This document shows positions 1 through 8,781 of a stretch of 64,000 nucleotides of DNA, in pieces (the stretch's first letter is position 1; each line of letters starts with the position of its first letter). Both the position numbers and the translations under genes were made by a program. Source of the DNA: Paraphysomonas bandaiensis (Eukaryota; Protista; Chrysophyceae); contig CBFFRP010000400.1 of NCBI GenBank assembly GCA_965644295.1, positions 1 through 64,000 of the forward strand, given 5' to 3'. Under the pieces are notes generated by a model. That model saw nothing but the letters and a program-made list of their open reading frames with translations. It was not told the origin of the DNA and searched no databases.

Positions 1-1080
1 GTGTGCAGTCGAGGCACATATGTTTTAGGGAATCTAGTCGAAACCCGCAGTCAGAGCATGCGGCTTTGGTCAGGTCAAGCCCCTGTTTGGTTTTGGCCCG
101 GTTCCTCCCTATGCAGAAAGATTTGTCCCATGTCAGTGCCGTGTTGAGAATTCTTTGGCGTAGATTTGAGCTGAGTTTGTCTTTGGATGCACTGCCATCC
201 GCTTGAGCTAGTTTGCGCGGGAGGTGTACTCCGCTATTGGTCCAGTAGCCAGGCGCTCGATCAGGATTGTTTCCGTAGCGTTGATCTCTGGTTGAAGTGT
301 AGTTCTCAAGTGTCCTTAGGTCGCAGAGATCTTGGAAATCAGTAAGGAGTGGGCTAGAGTAGTATGGCCGTCTTGTACTGTGCAAACGCCAGTGCCATAA
401 TCCAGCGGTTAGTAAGCGTTCAATGGCACTGTCAATCGCAATTGTACAGACAGTGTAGTTATTTTTTCCAAGGATGCGATCGACTTCATGCCAGTCTTCA
501 CCCGCGACTGCGTCCGCAATATAGATGCCCTTGTCCTCAAACGTCCACTCCGTTTCATCTGTGGTACGTCGTTCGGGATGGGACCTCACCCAGGTCACCT
601 GTCGTTTGCAATCTCTACTGGCCGCGATGCTTTCGAGTAGTACCCCTTTTGCACGGTGACCGAGAGCTCTGCGTCTTGTGGAGAGTGCTTCCTCAGTACG
701 GGTGCACACTGCCTGACAGTCTGTGTGGCTTCTTATGTGTTCGGGAATGCGTGTTGAGAGTATAAGCCCCATGGCTGTGCCTATGAGTTCATATGCGTAT
801 GAGTCCAAACCTGGCACATCACGAAAGGGTGTATCTAGTCGTAGTATTATGGTTGTACCATCTTCCCAGGCATTTTCTGGGGGTAAGTAGACGACCGCTG
901 CACCTCCTCGGTGTGTCCATCGTGTTCGCGGATTGACATGAGTGAGGCGACGCGTGGAGAGCGCACTGGCTGTGTATGATCCATCTGTGAAGATTGCCTT
1001 GAAAGTATCTGGTTGGACGCTATTAAGGCCGAGTTCTTGTTTTAGATTGGTCAGCATGTGTTCATCCTGTGGTTCGGGGG
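1..1080 (-). CDS. LINE polyprotein, C-terminal part: RNase H and CCHC zinc finger (partial, runs off window)
   Basis: Manual translation of segments in the frame reached after the G5 run at 1076-1080: FKAIFTDGSY, DSYAYELIG, WVRSHPERR, GIYIADAVAG; CSDCGFRLDSLKHMCLDC at ~5-58. Absent from the ORF track, probably because the frame has no stop inside the window. Confidence 0.85.
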
Positions 1081-3312
1081 CTCAGGTTGCTGAAGGGTAA
1101 GGCCCAATTCCGTTCCCCATTCCCTGAGGCTGAGAACATAGTGGTGGTATTGGGGCTGTGGCTCTGTTGTCTGAGTGAGTAGAAAATGTGCTGCTTGACC
1201 TGCTTCTCCCCCGAGGGTTATTGCGCGCTGTAGAGATCCCCATTTTTGCTCCTGCGCCGAGTCTGAGAAACGTTTCATACCTAATCCGTTGTGCTTGAGT
1301 GAGAGGTAGATCAGTTCCGTGGGGTATCCAGGGCCTAGACTGAGGGCCTTTCTGTAGAGGGTTGCGCAAGCAGCGTCAATTTCTCTGTACCAGTGTAGCG
1401 GCCATGAAGCTTTGGTGGCTCTATAGAGCAAAGTCGGTATGATTTGGGTCTCGATAACCATGACTTTACAGCCGGCTGAGGCCTGTTTAATCCCTAGGTG
1501 TGTGGTCACGACTTTCAGGTATTTTAGACACCAATCATGGGAGGCCTTGTCTGTGATTGTGAGAGGAAGGTCTGCTCCGAGGTAATGTATCGACTCTAGT
1601 GATGTTTGGATAGGGACTGGGTGTGGACGCCACGACCAGTCGTAGAGAATGATGTAGCCAATGGGGTCGGAGGACTTGTTGGAATCTTGTAGGATCGGAA
1701 ACACTGTGCAAACTACTTTGGGGATAGAGAGTTCCATTCCCGAAAGTACGCAGAACGCAGATATTTGTTGGGCAATGAGTTGGGCAGCGTGTATGGATTT
1801 AGCTATTGTGTTAAGATCATCCGCGAAGGAGATCTTTATTTCGCCGGTAGTCGGAGTCGTGAGTTGAATAGTTGGTAACGTTGGACTCGTTGTTGACAGT
1901 TCAATGTCCAGCCACGTGAGAAGGATGTCGTAGAGTGCCACCCAGGCGCATGTGGATTCTGTGCCCCCTTGGGTGATACCCCTTTCGGCTTCGAAACCCA
2001 GACTGAATAGTGCAATGAAGTGGCCGTCTGCGGACAGGAGGTCAAGGAGAGAACGTGGCTCTATGTTGTTTGCCATGAATGGTGTCCAGGGAAATGTTAG
2101 ACCGCCGGCATCTAAGTTGCCAAACCAGTCAACTACATCGTCCGGAACGCCCAGTCGTGCCCACGCGAGACGCATGAGGTTAGGCGCAATTGAGTCGAAG
2201 GCCTTCTTGAAGTCCCAGAGTGTACATATATGCTGGTCGCCTTTTCGTCTTGCTTCTTCTGCAGCCGCGAGTACCCTTAGTATCGCTGTGTCCGTCCCGT
2301 TCCTCCAGCGATAACCATGCTGGGACGGATGCAAAACTTTCTGTTCCTCCCATACGGTAAGAATTCTATGAGTGATTATCCTTGTTAATATTTTCCTACT
2401 GACTTCAAGCAGACCAATCGGTCGGAGATTAGTGAGGGAGGATTCTCCTGGTTTCTTGAGAATGGGAGACATTACCCTGTCTCTCCACCAAATGGGCACA
2501 TGTTTATGTTTCCAGAGAGATCTGGTGAGGATGTAAGCCTCTCGCTGAACTACCGGTGGCCAGGATTTGACCATGTTGGAGGAGACCATTGAGGGTCCAG
2601 GCGCGCGGTTGAAGGAGAGAGAGTGAAGTGTGCAGTAGAATTCATCCTGGGTGATGTCTTTTGCAAGAGTAGATTTGAGTGTGGCTGCCATGGCCGGAGT
2701 GGTCTTGGTACAAAGGGCCCGTCGTAACCCCAGTTGCAGGGGAAGAGGGATTTTCGAGCGGGGGTGGAGTGGTTCCTGGCATGTCGCTGAGCCCGGATCA
2801 AGAAGGGATTTCCACCATGTAGGGTCATCCTGGAGCTGTTGTGCTACAGGGTCAAGTCCAGGAGGTTTGGCATGATGTTCACGGAAGTGCGCATTAATGC
2901 CTTCATGAATGTCTTGCGGTGTTGTGAGGATGTGTCCGTCAGTTGTTTTCACCGTGGTAAGTCGGAGTGGTGTTTTGACCTTGAGACCAATTTTCTGAAG
3001 AATTGCTTGAAGTCTTTTCTGCTGTAGCAGTGCCTCCATCTGATTGGTGCGAGCCGTGAGTCTAGTCCGCATTTCTGTCCTGGCTCTTCCATGAAGAAGT
3101 CCTCTCAGTCGCAAGGCAATTCGGAGAAGGTTTTTCTTGGTGGCTTGCTTTTCGTTCCAACCCAGGATTACTCGTGGGTCCGCGTTGCGATGGCTGCACC
3201 AGAAGTTGATGTCTGATATGCCTTTGATGTGACCCTGAGAACTCCTGAGATAGGAGTCCCATCGGATGAACCATGCAGTGATGATTTCGTGGGTGGGGGT
3301 GGTTGCCGGGGG
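1081..3312 (-). CDS. LINE polyprotein, reverse transcriptase part
   Basis: ORF 1051-3450: RAPGPS, PILKKPG, LRPIGLLE, QHGYR, DFKKAFDSI, RGITQG, SFADDL, HYLG, GLG. Confidence 0.93.
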
Positions 3313-6300
3313 CCGCGCCATCCATGCCGTTTGTATCCGGCAGAATTGAACATCTTTTGGATAATCCGCAAAACCATGATCATTCCTTCCTGTATTACTC
3401 TCATTTCCGGGGAAAAGCCATTCTTGAACTTTGAGCGTTTGCGCTGACAACGTTCGTGTAGTCGTGTGCTATAAGTACATGCAGGACGCTTCGCTTCAAG
3501 CGAAGCCTGGAGGGTTATGTGATGGATGGCCGCTAGTCTGTTGGCTGCCACCTCAGGAGGGAGTATGGCAGACGATCCGTTGTCTAAATGTGGTAGTTGT
3601 GCATGAAGTTGGAGGAGTCTTGCGGTGTATGCCTGTACTTCCTTGGAGTCCTTCGGGTTTACATTGAGACGGGGGGGGATTCGGAGGTGCGACTCAGGTG
3701 GTCGAGGGTCAAGATTGACTGGTACAGTGAAACCGACCCAGACCGGTCGATGATCGAAGGCTGCTGCGAGTAGTGAGGGGGAGTCAAGGCAGCCAGTGTC
3801 CGTAACAGACATGTTCGGAAGTAACGGCGTGTGTAGAATATGATCGATCCGCGATATTCCTTTGTCTAATCTGTGGAAGGTATGATATGTTTTCCTGGGT
3901 AGGAGAAGCTCATGGAGTGGTGCAGCCAGTTGGAGTTTGTCGGCAAGTGGTCGTATGTCTCTGCCTTTCGGATTTGTCTCCATGGAGCCATTGAAGTCGC
4001 CGGCGACAATGACAGTATGGTCCTTGGCTCTGGCTTTAGTGACCCATTTCGTAAGGATGTTGCATAGGAGCTTGTAGGGGTCAGCCGTACAGATACCACG
4101 GGACGCTCTCCCTAGCTTGGTCAATTTGCTCCATAATGTGCAAGAGCCTGGCGTGGATGGCTTCGGGGGTAGATAGACGCTTATTAGTACTAGGGTGTGC
4201 GCCACCGACGTTTTGAACTCTAGTCGGCTCACTAAACCAAGTCCGGTAAAGTCAGCCTTTGTGAAGGCGAGACGGCGCTTCCAGTATTCGCTGATTATGA
4301 CTACTGTACCCCCCATTAGTGGGTCTCTTGAAGTCAGTTTTGGCTGCTTGCTGAGGAAGAGGCATATTCTTGATCCCTGGATTGCATCTTCTATGATACG
4401 TGTGAAGAAGTTGGCCTGAGTTTCTGTTAGACGGACATCCTGTAATAGGAGCACGTCCAATTTTTGCCGCTTAAAGTGTCGGATGATAGCTTGGACTTTG
4501 CCTGTGTGAGATGCCGGATTGCCATTTGTGTTCCATGTGGAGAGTCGGAGTCCCATGGCTGCTCCCGAGGGAGCCTTGGGGATGCTGCTGGAGGTCTCTG
4601 TAGGAGTTCCACTCTTGTCTGCAAGGAGTCTGTCCCATACTGCTTTATTGGCACCGCCTATGTCGCTGTCGTACGCAGCCCTGGCTTGGATTAATATCTC
4701 AAGTGGCCAGCGTTGATCACACCAGTAATGATGCCCGTAGTTGATGAGAAGTTCTTCATCCTTAGCAATGGGACGTATTGTACGGACATAGAGGCGTTTA
4801 TTTTTCGTGACAAACTTGACATTAGCCATGTTTGTGGCTAGGGGGTCATTAATATACCCAGCTTCGCATGTTACACATTGTCGGACTTGGTCAAAGCCAT
4901 CTATTGCGAAGGTACCAGTACTGTCTTGAACTATGTAATCAGAACGCCTTGCAGACTGACTCAGCTTTGTTAGTGGATAGCGTTTGCCTTTGTACTCAGC
5001 AATGATGACGTCTGCTGGGAATGTGTTCTTCGCATAAAGGGATAGTCCTTTGGCAGTGTTATCGGCGTACGCAATGTAGAACTTTCTTGACCAGTCCTTG
5101 TCCCAGCTGGTGGTATCAAGTGCTGGAGTTGGTCTGATCGTTCGTGTGGTCGTGGATTGGTGTGAGTTGTGAAGGTTCGTTGGTTGGTCACTTTCATCGT
5201 AATTTACGACCTTTTTGGCTTTCCGGGTTGGCTGGCATCGACTTGTCAACGCAGTTTGGGCGTGTTTCAACTGCATCTTCCTGTGCGATGGTAGTGCTCC
5301 AGGGGTTGAAGCCTGCAGAATCTGTCGATTTGTTCGTGCTAACTTGGTGCTGCTGGACGAGGTTGTTCTGGTGCTGGTCGTCTTTGATGTCCTATTGTTG
5401 TTCGTGATTGAGTCCGCGGGAAGTGTAGGTGGAGCGATGGGGTCAGACGTTGAGAGTATACTGGTGGCCAAGGTGTTTTCAAGAGATAGTAGGGCGTTGT
5501 CTAGGGCAGTAGAAAGACCGGCAGGGTCTAAGAGGAAGTAGTGAGCATCTTGTAGTATGACATGGTAGTAGTTATCACGAATAGCGTTCCTAAGTTCCTC
5601 CACCTTCCATGCGATGTTATAAGCTACTTTGTCAGTAGGGATACCTACAATGCTGAGATAATTACCATTTTGCGCCCACGTCGTGCAGGGGTTGATAGTA
5701 GAGGCTAAAAGGTGGACCTCTCGCACTGAGAGCCAGTGAGTTATGTCGTCCTCCGTAGTGTATGTTGTTTTGGCAGGTATTAAAAGTGCGGCCTGTGCGT
5801 GATCCAACTTATGTCGTAGTGGCTGAAGTGTGTGATGGGCCATGCACTCCCGTTGCATTGTGTCGAACGCTTGGGTGCCTAATGTATTTATAAAAGATGC
5901 TAGCGTGTGACGGTCCTTGCGTTGTTTGAGGTCTAATTTCAGACAGGAGCGAGTGTGTCGCCTGCTTGAAGCAAGAATGTGCAGATGATAGAGTGTGCTG
6001 TATGCGCAGTATCCATCACTTGGGATATGTTGTTGTGTGCGAAGGGCTGAGGGTCTGAGGGTGAGGCGATAGACTCTGCTCATGTCGCACATATGGAGCC
6101 TGAGTTGTCGACGGTCCGTGGGGTTCATCTGCCGTAGTTGACGTCGAGCTCTCGGTGACAAGGAGACTGCAATTACTTCCCTCTGTTCCTGTTGCTCTCT
6201 TTGCTCATGTAGCATAGATGGTACAGTTGACGGTTCCGAAGTCCAGATGATGTTGGTGCTCTGTCTGGAGGTCTGGTGTTGTAGAAAACAGGATAGCCGC

Positions 6301-6978
6301 TCCTGAGTTCGTGTTAGAGCGTGCATGATGGAGGTGGGGATATTTGTTGCATTTAGTATGTGAAACCCATGCTGGCTGCGTATGATGTCATGGGTTACCA
6401 CAGTGTTGGTAGAAGCGTGCACTGTTAGTGCCTGTCTGGAGAATGGTGATAGCTGTGCCCAACCAGGCGCCAGGTGCGGTTGAACAGCGTCCCATAGTCT
6501 GTATGGTATGGAGAGAAGATCGAGTAGCAGTTGGAAATCCTCCGTGTCTAGATGTAGTCCTGTGTGTGGATTCGAGGATTCATATTGCATAAGTGTCTTA
6601 CGGAGAGTGACAGTGGCTGTTGAGGGAATACCCTTTGTCAGGCAAAGGGTCCGCACATGCCTAGATACAACATGAGTGGAGTCTGCCCAGGGTTTGTTGC
6701 CATTCGCGAGATGCTGGGCAACTAGTAGGGCGCTGTGCGTGGTGTCCAATTTGTGCTCTGGTAGCGTGAATGATATCATGAGATCATAGTTGTCCGTCCT
6801 GGAAGCCTTGGCTATGAATCCTTCCCATATGTCTAAACAGGCAGGGGATAGCATGTGTGCGTATATTTCTTTTAAAAGGTTTCCCTGTGGGGAGGCAGCA
6901 ATGGTTTGGGTTTCATCATATCTAACCCAGTTGTTCAGCAGATCGGAGTGAAAGGGCGTGTGACCCCGGCCCTCTGTG
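3313..6978 (-). CDS. LINE polyprotein, N-terminal part: OTU-like protease (~5530-6040), SET domain (~4720-5090), AP endonuclease (~3735-4550)
   Basis: ORF 3168-6854. IPSDGYCAY...QDAHYF (OTU-type DGxC...HY); KGLSLYA...IAEYKG...GYINDP...EELLINYGHHYW (SET); APE motifs. Shifts into the RT frame at the G5 run 3308-3312. Confidence 0.85.
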
Positions 6979-8302
6979 TTATATTATTATTATAGGTAGG
7001 GCTATATTATTTTTGGTGGCCTTATTTTTTCTGACGCAAAGTGACTGGATTTCAACCACCCTTTTGCGGAATAGATAGTGCGAAATGTGACTACAATGAC
7101 GTCTATGTATGCGAACGCTAAGGCGTTTAACCAAGCTTTTGGAAAGTGGAAGGTGGGTCATGTGAGTTGTATGTTAATGAAATTTTGTACTCTATGTTCT
7201 TGGAGGTACACTTTCAACGAATAGCTATATACTATATAATATATAGTGTTTTCTCGCATTGCATTTAATGTGTTCTACCTCTATATCTTAGAAAAACATA
7301 CGTATTCCAACAGTCACATGCCATTGTCAGCAATTAAATATTGAATTGAGCAGTACTCATATCCCTACGAAACTGAAGTATCATCACTGATCAAGATGCG
7401 GAAGATAATCAGAGGTTGACTGTGAAAGTATAAACTTATGTTGTTCTTGTGTCTTACATGACAAAGCATAATTTACTATGCAATATCTACTTAGTCAAAA
7501 GACATAACTTACCTTCCACGATGACTTAAATAAGAAAGTCGAAATATTTTAAATTCGTTCTTCTGTATTTTCCGTGAAAAGCACATCGAATATAACTGTA
7601 ACACATGTAAAAGGAAATATGATGGGTACATTGTAGTTCATTAACTAAGAAAATACAAATGTAATCGCTATTACAATCACAACGGTTATCATAATGTATT
7701 TAATTGTTTGCTGGGGACCGTGTTGTGTAATGTACATGTGTACACTCTTCAATTATAATGGTCTGTTAAATTAATTAATATAACATTAGATAATTATTAT
7801 TCTCTATCTTTCAAAACAAATTCTTCCTGTGTACTATTAGAGAATAGGATACATATATGTCATGGATATGCATAGTATGTTTCCCTATTGCGTGCGTTTC
7901 AATCAATTCCTTAAACGGAACGTGCCAATACTAATGGATATGGATTATATGTTTTATAAGGCTTCTTTTATCAATCAATCCTTTGGAATGATGTGTATAA
8001 TCTGACCATCTATTGGACTGGTTTAGTTATACGTATAGACAAAGTAATCAATACAGATGTGTATTGGGGATGGAATCTTCATATTTTCATTATCATCTAG
8101 TGCTTCAGAGTACTCAGTTTAACATCACACTATCATATGATCAACCTTAACTTGTATGCTGATAGCAACCTTCATGTAATATCAGATACGTAGCAGTGTG
8201 AACTGGCAGGAGCCGGATACTGTGTACATAACTAATAAAGTGGCTGCTTCCCTGTAAAGTGGTGTTTTATATAAAAGTACCAGTTTCTGTGTGAACCCAA
8301 AA

Positions 8303-8443
8303 CATACATAAGTACATACATACATACATACATACATACATACATACATACATACATACATACATACATACATACATACATACATACATACATACATACA
8401 TACATACATACATACATACATACATACATACATACATACATAC

Positions 8444-8474
<31 letters not shown>

Positions 8475-8660
8475 CATACATACATACATACATACATACA
8501 TAAGTACATACATACATACATACATACATACATACATACATACATACATACATACATACATACATACATACATACATACATACATACATACATACATACA
8601 TACATACATACATACATACATACATACATACATACATACATACATACATACATAAGTACA
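8303..8660. repeat. (TACA)n microsatellite
   Basis: Near-perfect tetranucleotide array of ~350 bp. Confidence 0.99.
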
Positions 8661-8781
8661 TAAGTATATGTATATGAGTAGAGGTTATATATGTATGTCT
8701 CCATTCATATAATCACAAACACGCCTCTGAATAAACCACAGTTCTCTCCCCCACCTCCCCCATCCTCTCCCCCTTCATACC

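What the first reader, a model, noticed from the sequence alone, without database searches (positions are those of the whole stretch)
4720..6040. LINE polyprotein carrying an OTU-like protease plus a SET domain: a possible chromatin-writing retrotransposon
Seen: two extra modules lie upstream of the APE endonuclease in the same uninterrupted frame. One is OTU-like, IPSDGYCAY (Cys ~6007)...QDAHYF (His ~5542). The other is a complete SET domain (KGLSLYA, IAEYKG, GYINDP, EELLINYGHHYW), separated from the first by a basic S/T-rich linker. Known: cysteine proteases occur in some single-ORF non-LTR elements (Ulp1-type in NeSL, a protease in Dualen/RandI); SET domains are SAM-dependent lysine methyltransferases; OTUs are deubiquitinases. 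I know of no well-described LINE with an in-frame SET domain, but could not search. Inference: the element may deubiquitinate and methylate histones or host defence proteins at its insertion site, or use SET as a chromatin reader. The ND in place of the canonical NH is non-standard, so activity is uncertain.
Basis: partly seen in the sequence, partly recalled or inferred. Interest (0 to 1): 0.92.

Follow-up and report, generated by a model that had tools for sequence, protein, structure and literature searches.

The report
LINE retrotransposon carrying SET and OTU-like domains
A young, multi-copy jumping gene (LINE) of a marine protist carries, in the same giant reading frame as its endonuclease and reverse transcriptase, a genuine SET lysine-methyltransferase domain and a probable OTU-type cysteine protease, so the element seems to bring its own protein- or chromatin-modifying enzymes.

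Summary
Window 3168-6854 (-) is one open frame with APE (Pfam 39 bits), a SET domain above Pfam's cut-off (37 bits) and, upstream, a conserved Cys...His module.

The SET fold is confirmed by a model (pLDDT 81; 371 SET/PR matches). The OTU call is weaker. Pfam and sequence searches are blank and the model is poor (pLDDT 61), but every domain-spanning structural match and the nearest named language-model clusters are OTU deubiquitinases.

The window copy is not the whole element. It is 5'-truncated at 6979, cut by the contig start, and differs from an intact copy by two 1-nt G-run deletions. Intact copies encode one 2,800-3,700-aa ORF.

At least four lineages (RT identity down to 53%) keep OTU-like-SET-APE-RT. 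Both modules are as constrained as APE and RT, which rules out a one-off capture.

The odd 'NDP' in place of 'NHSC' is a family trait. Ty3/Gypsy elements of the same genome share it, with SET between RNase H and integrase.

No paper describing a SET-bearing LINE was found. The scan had already noted SET-bearing LINE and Gypsy elements on other DNA of this genome. Enzymatic activity and any chromatin role remain untested.

The parts
1..6979 (-). One copy of the LINE. It is 5'-truncated at 6979, its 3' end is cut by the contig start, and it is 99.8% identical to intact copy G000:C440:4173-13235.
   Evidence: blastn: window 1-6979 = C440 4913-11893, 10 mismatches, 2 one-base gaps; other copies extend further 5'
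5457..6149 (-). OTU-like cysteine-protease module (aa 236-466 of the window ORF). Invariant Cys is codon 6006-6008 in the I-P-x-(D/N)-G-Y-C-A-Y motif; invariant His is codon 5541-5543 in the A-H-(Y/F) motif.
   Evidence: conserved in 4 lineages; fold matches to OTU only, weak; ESM features: OTU; no sequence-level hit
5088..5456 (-). Basic, Ser/Thr-rich linker that is poorly conserved
   Evidence: translation; (pN 0.41-0.58 against 0.18-0.38 in the flanking domains)
4680..5087 (-). SET domain (Pfam core 4734-5048) of the compact 'NDP' subtype. The catalytic Tyr lies in the N-Y-G motif at 4722-4745.
   Evidence: Pfam 36-55 bits in 4 lineages; PDB sequences: vSET, KMT2C/D, PRDM1; model pLDDT 81, top hits SET/PR domains, E 1e-8
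3825..4538 (-). APE-type endonuclease (Exo_endo_phos)
3303..3307 (.). G5 run that is G6 in intact copies and in RNA-library contigs. It causes the apparent frame break between the APE and RT parts.
1576..2457 (-). Reverse transcriptase (RVT_1)
500..1000 (-). RNase H-like segment, recognised by motifs only (FTDGS, YELIG, HTDCQAV, WVRSHPE, IYIADA); Pfam is blank
5..58 (-). C-terminal Cys-x2-Cys-x8-His-x4-Cys knuckle typical of LINE ORF2 tails

Best explanation
Shown. This is a copy of an autonomous, recently active APE-type LINE of a marine protist. Intact members encode a single 2,800-3,700-aa polyprotein ordered as: N-terminal region of unknown fold, OTU-like Cys/His module, S/T-rich linker, compact SET domain, APE, RT, RNase H-like segment, CCHC. 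The OTU-like and SET modules are stable, selected parts of the element. They entered before the clade diversified. The SET belongs to an unusual 'NDP' subtype whose nearest relatives are SET domains sitting between RNase H and integrase in Ty3/Gypsy elements of the same genome.

Inferred, most likely mechanism. The SET domain is an active SAM-dependent lysine methyltransferase. It travels with the integration enzyme (APE here, integrase in the Gypsy elements) and methylates a chromatin protein, most plausibly a histone tail, at or near the target site. An alternative substrate is an element or host protein in the RNP. The OTU-like module is a papain-fold cysteine protease that cuts the giant polyprotein in cis and/or removes ubiquitin-like modifiers.
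For: Architecture and copies:
- at least 30 copies at >=96% identity. Intact open frames are 3021 aa (C440), 2823 aa (C433), 2795 aa (C143) and 3731 aa (C644).
- 5'-truncated copies, typical of LINEs.

SET domain:
- above the Pfam cut-off in all four lineages.
- SET fold, pLDDT 81, TM 0.64-0.75 to SET7/9, SETD8, PRDM and MLL.
- every residue invariant across 22 compact SETs is retained (G14, D63, N80, N89, E112, Y117).
- Y117 aligns with the catalytic Tyr of KMT2C/D.

Selection:
- Synonymous sites are saturated (pS 0.66-0.85).
- pN for the OTU-like module is 0.20/0.38 and for SET 0.18/0.34, equal to APE (0.16/0.35) and RT (0.17/0.31).
- Linkers evolve faster, at 0.41-0.58.

Relation to Gypsy SETs:
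- Gypsy elements read RT-RNaseH-SET-IN.
- they share the NDP(L/I) and YG..YW motifs with the LINE SET.
- LINE SETs are monophyletic (99/99) and group with Gypsy SETs (92/92).

OTU-like module:
- invariant Cys at the start of a helix and His on a strand.
- about 45 of the top 50 Foldseek hits are OTU DUBs; best E 0.011, probability 0.98.
- the only domain-spanning VIA matches are OTUs (Z 4.6-5.8, 127-145 residues aligned).
- atlas shape hits are Otubain and OTU.
- 47 of 100 ESM-feature hits fall in an OTU set.

Presence in RNA libraries: searches show >=99% identical contigs in polyA metatranscriptomes.
Against: - No enzymatic activity, substrate or processing site is shown.
- The canonical NHSC His is Asp. 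The second Gly of the GxG SAM-binding motif is Ser/Ala in the LINE lineages.
- The OTU-like module fails Pfam OTU at E<=1 and PDB sequence search. It has no relatives outside its own family among 1.84 billion representatives.
- Its model is poor (pLDDT 61, pTM 0.58), and Z 5-6 is within the range the tool calls common.
- The residue at Cys-3 is Asp in two lineages and Asn in two.
- RNA-library contigs do not prove transcription.
- The clade is so far seen in one species only; environmental hits are 99% identical to this genome.
Confidence: 0.55

Rival explanations
1. The SET domain is retained but does not write chromatin. Either it methylates a non-histone protein (the element's own polyprotein, an RNP component or a host restriction factor), or it acts non-catalytically as a binding or reader module.
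For: NH is ND and GxG is GxS/GxA. Its structural neighbours include PR domains, which sit alongside SET7/9 in the hit list. Purifying selection shows function, not which function.
Against: The catalytic Tyr and the SAM-contacting Asn are invariant. In two unrelated retrotransposon classes the SET sits directly beside the DNA-integration enzyme, which fits action at the target site.
Confidence: 0.3
2. The Cys/His module is not an OTU protease. It is a lineage-specific alpha/beta domain of another function, and the OTU resemblance is an artefact of a low-confidence model plus a short motif.
For: No profile or sequence hit to OTU. Model pLDDT is 61. Foldseek E is 0.011 or worse, TM 0.34-0.45, and VIA Z is below 6.
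Against: Four partly independent lines converge on OTU and on no other fold. Cys and His are invariant, in the Cys-then-His order and on the secondary-structure elements expected for papain-like enzymes. Constraint equals that of APE and RT.
Confidence: 0.3
3. The modules are a one-off capture of host exons by a single dead copy, or a chimeric mis-assembly. On this reading they have no role in the element's life cycle.
For: The window copy itself is truncated and frameshifted.
Against: The same order recurs in at least 30 near-identical copies and in lineages with only 36-56% identity. Open frames are intact, up to 3731 aa. Constraint is at the RT level. The same architecture appears on independently assembled metagenome contigs.
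Confidence: 0.02

Closest known systems
DNMT-bearing retrotransposons (SymbioLINE-Dnmt, SymbioDIRS-Dnmt3, KnitGypsy-Dnmt3; PMC5890265)
   Same: Retrotransposons of several classes in protist or algal genomes have taken an epigenetic 'writer' enzyme into their coding region. They keep it under purifying selection at the level of RT, across many active subfamilies.
   Different: There the enzyme is a C5 cytosine DNA methyltransferase, and in the LINE it lies in ORF1. Here it is a SET protein-lysine methyltransferase fused in frame just upstream of APE, together with a protease-like module. That paper does not mention SET.
Helentrons and proto-Helentron (PMC4067079)
   Same: These are transposons with an APE-type endonuclease that also carry OTU-like cysteine protease genes. 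In Phytophthora infestans they also carry a SET-domain ORF.
   Different: They are rolling-circle Rep/helicase DNA transposons, and OTU and SET are separate ORFs. Here there is no Rep or helicase, an RT is present, and both modules are fused into one polyprotein.
Single-ORF LINEs with cysteine proteases: Dualen/RandI (Josephin-related; PMC9977147) and NeSL/Utopia (Ulp1-like; PMC4640811)
   Same: A giant single ORF holding a ubiquitin/UBL-type cysteine protease beside the retrotransposition enzymes.
   Different: The protease class differs (OTU-like here). No restriction-like endonuclease was recognised, and none of those families is reported with a SET domain.
Ty3/Gypsy elements of the same genome with RT-RNaseH-SET-IN
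   Same: Same 'NDP' SET subtype with the C-terminal YG..YW motif, placed next to the integration enzyme. They are the nearest relatives of the LINE SET.
   Different: A different retrotransposon class (LTR, integrase), only 24-30% SET identity, and no OTU-like module detected by Pfam.
Chlorella virus PBCV-1 vSET (PDB 1n3j)
   Same: A minimal SET of about 120 aa without pre- or post-SET zinc clusters, carried by a genetic parasite. It is the best PDB sequence hit, through the shared C-terminal YG-x-x-YW segment.
   Different: The match is weak (E 0.003, C-terminal 33 residues only). vSET is a free-standing viral protein, not part of a retrotransposon polyprotein.

Membership tests
APE-type non-LTR retrotransposon (LINE) | Exo_endo_phos (APE) endonuclease N-terminal of a reverse transcriptase in one coding unit | tested here: met
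   intact 3021-aa frame in C440
APE-type non-LTR retrotransposon (LINE) | Dispersed multi-copy family with variable 5' truncation | tested here: met
   The 5' homology ends correspond to positions 4108, 4120 and 4307 of the intact copy, while other copies run further upstream.
APE-type non-LTR retrotransposon (LINE) | 3' tail (poly-A or simple repeat) and target-site duplication | not tested
   The 3' end lies outside the window.
SET domain lysine methyltransferases (PF00856) | Profile match above the curated cut-off | tested here: met
   37.2 bits against 22.4; 36-55 bits in three other lineages
SET domain lysine methyltransferases (PF00856) | SET beta-fold | tested here: met
   pLDDT 81, pTM 0.75; 371 PDB matches at E<=0.001, the top 50 all SET/PR domains
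SET domain lysine methyltransferases (PF00856) | Catalytic Tyr and SAM-contacting Asn conserved | tested here: met
   N80 and Y117 are invariant across 22 compact SETs. Y117 aligns with the final Tyr of the KMT2C/D 'YDY' motif.
SET domain lysine methyltransferases (PF00856) | Canonical N-H-S-C motif | tested here: not met
   The motif is N-D-P-L in all LINE lineages and N-D-P-L/I in the Gypsy SETs. Bacterial small SETs have N-D-A. This is a subtype trait, not a lesion.
SET domain lysine methyltransferases (PF00856) | Methyltransferase activity | not testable with these tools
   Needs a biochemical assay.
OTU deubiquitinases (PF02338, clan CA) | Profile match above the curated cut-off | tested here: not met
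   No hit at E<=1. A genome-wide PF02338 scan finds 10 host loci and none of the LINE copies.
OTU deubiquitinases (PF02338, clan CA) | Catalytic Cys at the N-terminus of a helix (D/N-G-x-C loop), followed about 150 residues later by His on a beta strand | tested here: met
   Cys48 and His203 of alignment A1 are invariant. The model's secondary structure has H48-61 and E203-207.
OTU deubiquitinases (PF02338, clan CA) | OTU fold | tested here: inconclusive
   The model is poor (pLDDT 61). Best Foldseek E is 0.011 with TM 0.34/0.45, and VIA Z is 4.6-5.8 over 127-145 residues. However, OTUs are the only domain-spanning matches, and atlas and ESM-feature searches agree.
OTU deubiquitinases (PF02338, clan CA) | Isopeptidase or protease activity | not testable with these tools
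   Needs probe labelling or cleavage assays.
Dualen/RandI LINE group | Both APE and a C-terminal restriction-like endonuclease | tested here: inconclusive
   The post-RT 771 aa have no Pfam hit at E<=5. Alignment shows RNase H-like motifs and a CCHC knuckle, but I recognised no PD-(D/E)xK motif. No profile for RLE was run.
Helentron | Rep (HUH) and helicase domains | tested here: not met
   No such Pfam hits anywhere in the 3021- and 3731-aa ORFs.

The most novel reading that the evidence does not exclude
Retrotransposons of two unrelated classes in one protist (a LINE and Ty3/Gypsy elements) have each wired the same unusual SET lysine methyltransferase next to their integration enzyme. In the LINE it is paired with an OTU-type deubiquitinase. 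On this reading the elements themselves write, and perhaps erase, histone marks at their insertion sites. This would be a transposon-encoded chromatin-programming system, either self-silencing or anti-silencing.
Probability: 0.3. Interest if true: 0.88.

Novelty: new variant of a known kind. Interest (0 to 1): 0.72.

Why it matters
Transposons are usually treated as passive targets of host chromatin silencing. The one well-documented exception is the group of retrotransposons that carry DNA methyltransferases.

A LINE that keeps a SET lysine methyltransferase and an OTU-like protease under RT-level constraint would extend that idea from DNA marks to protein or histone marks. The same SET subtype in co-resident Gypsy elements adds to the case.

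It gives a tractable system: compact domains, many intact copies, and environmental RNA-library signal. With it one could test whether mobile elements program the chromatin of their own insertion sites.

It also adds a third class of ubiquitin-type cysteine protease (OTU-like) to the single-ORF LINEs, beside Ulp1 and Josephin.

Tried and rejected
OTU-like module, searches that led nowhere:
- Pfam at E<=1.
- Profile search against PDB sequences, which gave only a spurious lectin repeat.
- Profile search of 1.84 billion representatives, which gave only fragments of the same family.

Other blank searches:
- The N-terminal 733 aa of the intact ORF have no Pfam hit at E<=5 and no ESM-atlas hit.
- The post-RT 771 aa have no Pfam hit.

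Relatives in other taxa:
- Two word-indexed searches found metagenome proteins.
- The two contigs compared (L052, and L043 carrying P0001) are 99.3-99.4% identical to copies in this genome. P0005 matches one lineage at 74% and was not compared further. No independent host was found.

Rejected idea: copies clustering at contig starts might mean telomere targeting. The contig breaks fall at variable points inside the repeat, so this is an assembly effect.

Not possible: fetching host OTU and SET genes for profile-profile comparison and a host-versus-element SET tree.

Literature: eight full-text searches found no paper describing a SET domain in a LINE or Gypsy element.

Full report
**1. What is in the window**

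The minus strand of window 3168-6854 is a single 1228-aa open frame. Pfam finds three things:
- an APE-type endonuclease at aa 773-1010 (39.1 bits);
- a SET domain at aa 603-707 (E 4.3e-9, 37.2 bits, curated cut-off 22.4), with a weaker overlapping PR-domain match;
- a reverse transcriptase in the next, overlapping ORF 1051..3450.

The Cys codon is 6006-6008 and the His codon 5541-5543. The two modules are joined by a Ser/Thr- and Lys/Arg-rich linker.

Downstream of RT there are RNase H-like motifs (about 500-1000) and a Cys-x2-Cys-x8-His-x4-Cys knuckle (5-58). These are seen only at motif level; Pfam is blank.

**2. The window copy is not the whole element**

The genome (62.5 Mb, 669 contigs) holds at least 30 copies that are 96-100% identical over the N-terminal 760 aa. 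RT hits number 140.

- An intact copy, C440:4173-13235 (-), has one 3021-aa open frame.
- The window matches it at 99.8% from window 1 to 6979.
- The window copy is therefore 5'-truncated at 6979, the ATG at 6854 is an internal Met, and the contig start cuts off the last ~740 nt of the ORF.
- Other copies are truncated at other points or run further upstream, as expected for LINEs.
- The only length differences from C440 are two missing G's in G-runs, after 1075 and after 3307.
- The one at 3307 produces the apparent APE/RT frame break. Contigs from other runs carry the extra G. These may be homopolymer assembly errors.

**3. Is the linkage conserved?**

Yes. Diverged lineages in the same genome keep the same order in intact frames:

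| Lineage | N-terminal identity to window | Open frame |
|---|---|---|
| C143 | 56% | 2795 aa |
| C32 | ~41% | at least 2062 aa, cut by the contig end |
| C644 | 36% | 3731 aa |

RT identity across these lineages falls to 53%. Further lineages (C412, C666, C426, C661) show SET and RT hits at the expected ~2.5-kb spacing. I found no full-length relative lacking the modules.

Selection was measured between lineages. Synonymous sites are saturated (pS 0.66-0.85). Non-synonymous divergence, for C440 against C143 and against C644:

| Region | pN vs C143 | pN vs C644 |
|---|---|---|
| OTU-like | 0.20 | 0.38 |
| SET | 0.18 | 0.34 |
| APE | 0.16 | 0.35 |
| RT | 0.17 | 0.31 |
| Linker (OTU-like to SET) | 0.41 | 0.54 |

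Against C32 the same linker reaches 0.58. Both modules are thus as constrained as the core enzymes.

**4. The SET domain**

- A model built on 22 compact SETs is confident: pLDDT 81, pTM 0.75.
- Foldseek returns 371 PDB matches at E<=0.001. The top ones are PRDM3/5/9 PR domains, SET7/9, SETD8 and MLL SETs, with TM 0.64-0.75.
- By sequence, the best solved relative is the chlorovirus vSET through the shared C-terminal YG-x-x-YW segment. KMT2C/D and PRDM1 follow.
- In that alignment 'A-G-Y-I-N-D-P-L' sits on 'A-R-Y-I-N-H-S-C', and the Tyr of 'N-Y-G' sits on the catalytic Tyr.
- All six positions invariant across the 22 sequences are retained (G14, D63, N80, N89, E112, Y117).

It is shared with other SETs, so it defines a subtype rather than marking decay.

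**5. Link to Gypsy elements**

After its own family, the LINE SET's next-best hits in the genome lie in long ORFs. Pfam resolves these as Ty3/Gypsy Pol with SET between RNase H and integrase: RT-RNaseH-SET-IN.

- They share N-D-P-(L/I), a conserved Cys before it, and the YG-x-x-YW tail.
- A profile search also found small stand-alone SETs with N-D-A. One lies on a clearly bacterial contig.
- The same search found another Gypsy-embedded SET in an unrelated metagenome.

In a maximum-likelihood tree:
- the four LINE SETs are monophyletic (99/99);
- the Gypsy SETs are monophyletic (86/93);
- the two groups join, together with one long-branch row, at 92/92;
- they sit apart from the bacterial NDA-type and canonical NHSC SETs.

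This fits one acquisition by the LINE clade before it diversified, and a common source or an exchange with the Gypsy elements. Host SET genes could not be included, so the donor is open.

Earlier notes of this scan on other DNA of this genome had reported SET-bearing LINE and Gypsy elements. I re-derived those points independently here.

**6. The OTU-like module**

Evidence against an OTU assignment at sequence level:
- no Pfam hit at E<=1;
- no PDB sequence hit;
- only fragments of its own family among 1.84 billion representatives;
- a genome-wide scan with PF02338 finds ten host loci but none of the LINE copies.

The four-lineage alignment has invariant Cys48 (in I-P-x-D/N-G-Y-C-A-Y) and His203 (in A-H-Y/F), 155 residues apart.

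The AlphaFold model is poor: pLDDT 61, pTM 0.58. It does place the Cys at the start of a helix and the His on a strand of a small sheet.

Searches with the model agree with each other, although none is significant on its own:
- Foldseek: about 45 of the top 50 PDB hits are OTU DUBs (nairovirus vOTUs, OTUB1/2, A20, Cezanne, TRABID). The best is E 0.011, probability 0.98, TM 0.34/0.45.
- VIA-align against 48,161 representatives, and on Foldseek's top 1000: the only matches spanning the domain (127-145 aligned residues, model 20-216) are OTUs, at Z 4.6-5.8. Equal-scoring rows are two-helix hairpins.
- ESM-atlas shape search: Otubain (TM 0.43) and OTU (TM 0.40/0.51).
- Language-model features: 47 of 100 nearest clusters fall in a set carrying PF02338.

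I rate an OTU-like papain fold at about 0.7. Formal membership of PF02338 is not met.

**7. How it most likely works**

Shown: the architecture, copy number, intact frames, constraint, and the SET fold with its catalytic residues.

Inferred:
- The SET domain is an active lysine methyltransferase.
- In two unrelated retrotransposon classes it sits directly beside the enzyme that engages target DNA (APE or integrase). The simplest reading is action on chromatin proteins at the integration site. The mark and its sign (self-silencing or anti-silencing) are unknown.
- Methylation of an element or host protein, or a non-catalytic role, is the main rival.
- A 3,000-aa single ORF with a papain-like protease suggests cis-processing of the polyprotein and/or deubiquitination. 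From my own knowledge, viral OTU and papain-like proteases act in this dual way.
- DUB-type proteases recur in single-ORF LINEs: Josephin-related in Dualen (PMC9977147) and Ulp1-like in NeSL/Utopia (PMC4640811).

**8. Occurrence and expression**

- Sampled 31-mers of the stretch occur in DNA runs of two coded organisms and in seawater, marine and hydrocarbon metagenomes from 14 studies. They also occur in polyA metatranscriptomes.
- Contigs from two polyA RNA libraries lie on parts of the RT, APE, SET and OTU-like regions at >=99% identity.
- This is compatible with transcription but does not prove it.
- The environmental contigs I compared are 99.3-99.4% identical to copies in this genome. 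One of them is filed under a bacterial MAG.
- The clade is therefore known so far from one species.

**9. Comparison with what is known**

- Closest precedent in concept: retrotransposons carrying DNA methyltransferases (PMC5890265). That paper does not mention SET.
- Closest in domain content: Helentrons, which carry OTU ORFs and, in a Phytophthora proto-Helentron, a SET ORF (PMC4067079). These are Rep/helicase DNA transposons with separate ORFs.
- Eight full-text searches found no description of a LINE or Gypsy element with a SET domain.

I file this as a new variant of a known kind: an APE-RT-RNH-CCHC LINE with two extra, selected enzymatic modules.

Noticed in passing
L034:3626-4078 (+) = G000:C644, aa 518-641 of the 3731-aa ORF: The C644 lineage has a second, N-terminal SET-like segment. 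It scores 21.5 bits in Pfam SET, just under the cut-off, and has S-D-P and D-Y-G at the motif positions. It lies in a ~700-aa extension absent from the window family. This may be a degenerate duplicated SET.
   Followed up: partly
window 6636-6979: A 634-nt contig covers only this 5' segment plus 264 nt further upstream. It appears in three runs at 4-10 times the depth of the rest of the element, with the same 27-nt unrelated sequence joined at 6636. This could be a splice or sub-genomic junction, or a separate abundant repeat sharing the LINE's 5' region.
   Followed up: no
L052 (NCBI GCA_002726235.1, PBSN01000010.1): A 7.3-kb contig filed in a marine MAG labelled Nitrospiraceae bacterium is 99.3% identical to the C32-lineage LINE of this eukaryote. 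It looks like a eukaryotic contig mis-binned into a bacterial MAG.
   Followed up: partly
window 1071-1080 and 3303-3307: Both frame-breaking differences from the intact copy are one-base shortenings of G-runs. Many 99-100% identical copies have very different open-frame lengths, which suggests homopolymer errors in the assembly rather than real decay.
   Followed up: partly
window 8182-8661: A tandem repeat whose translation reads (MYVC)n in two frames. It creates spurious 137- and 159-aa ORFs just beyond the LINE's 5' flank.
   Followed up: no
L035 (G000:C32) about 2074-2746, and L052:1-190: The N-terminal coding region of the C32 lineage contains tandem repeats of ~162 nt; one 190-nt query segment matches at four offsets, 90-95% identical. 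The window family also varies by a ~100-nt repeat unit near position 3367-3468 of the intact copy.
   Followed up: no
L048:4001-4405 (bacterial contig, P0011): Small stand-alone SET proteins of about 135-170 aa carry an N-D-A motif and the same YG-x-x-(Y/F)W tail. The one examined (P0011) lies among Omp85, TamB and response-regulator genes, so it is bacterial. The 'ND' SET subtype is therefore not confined to retrotransposons.
   Followed up: partly
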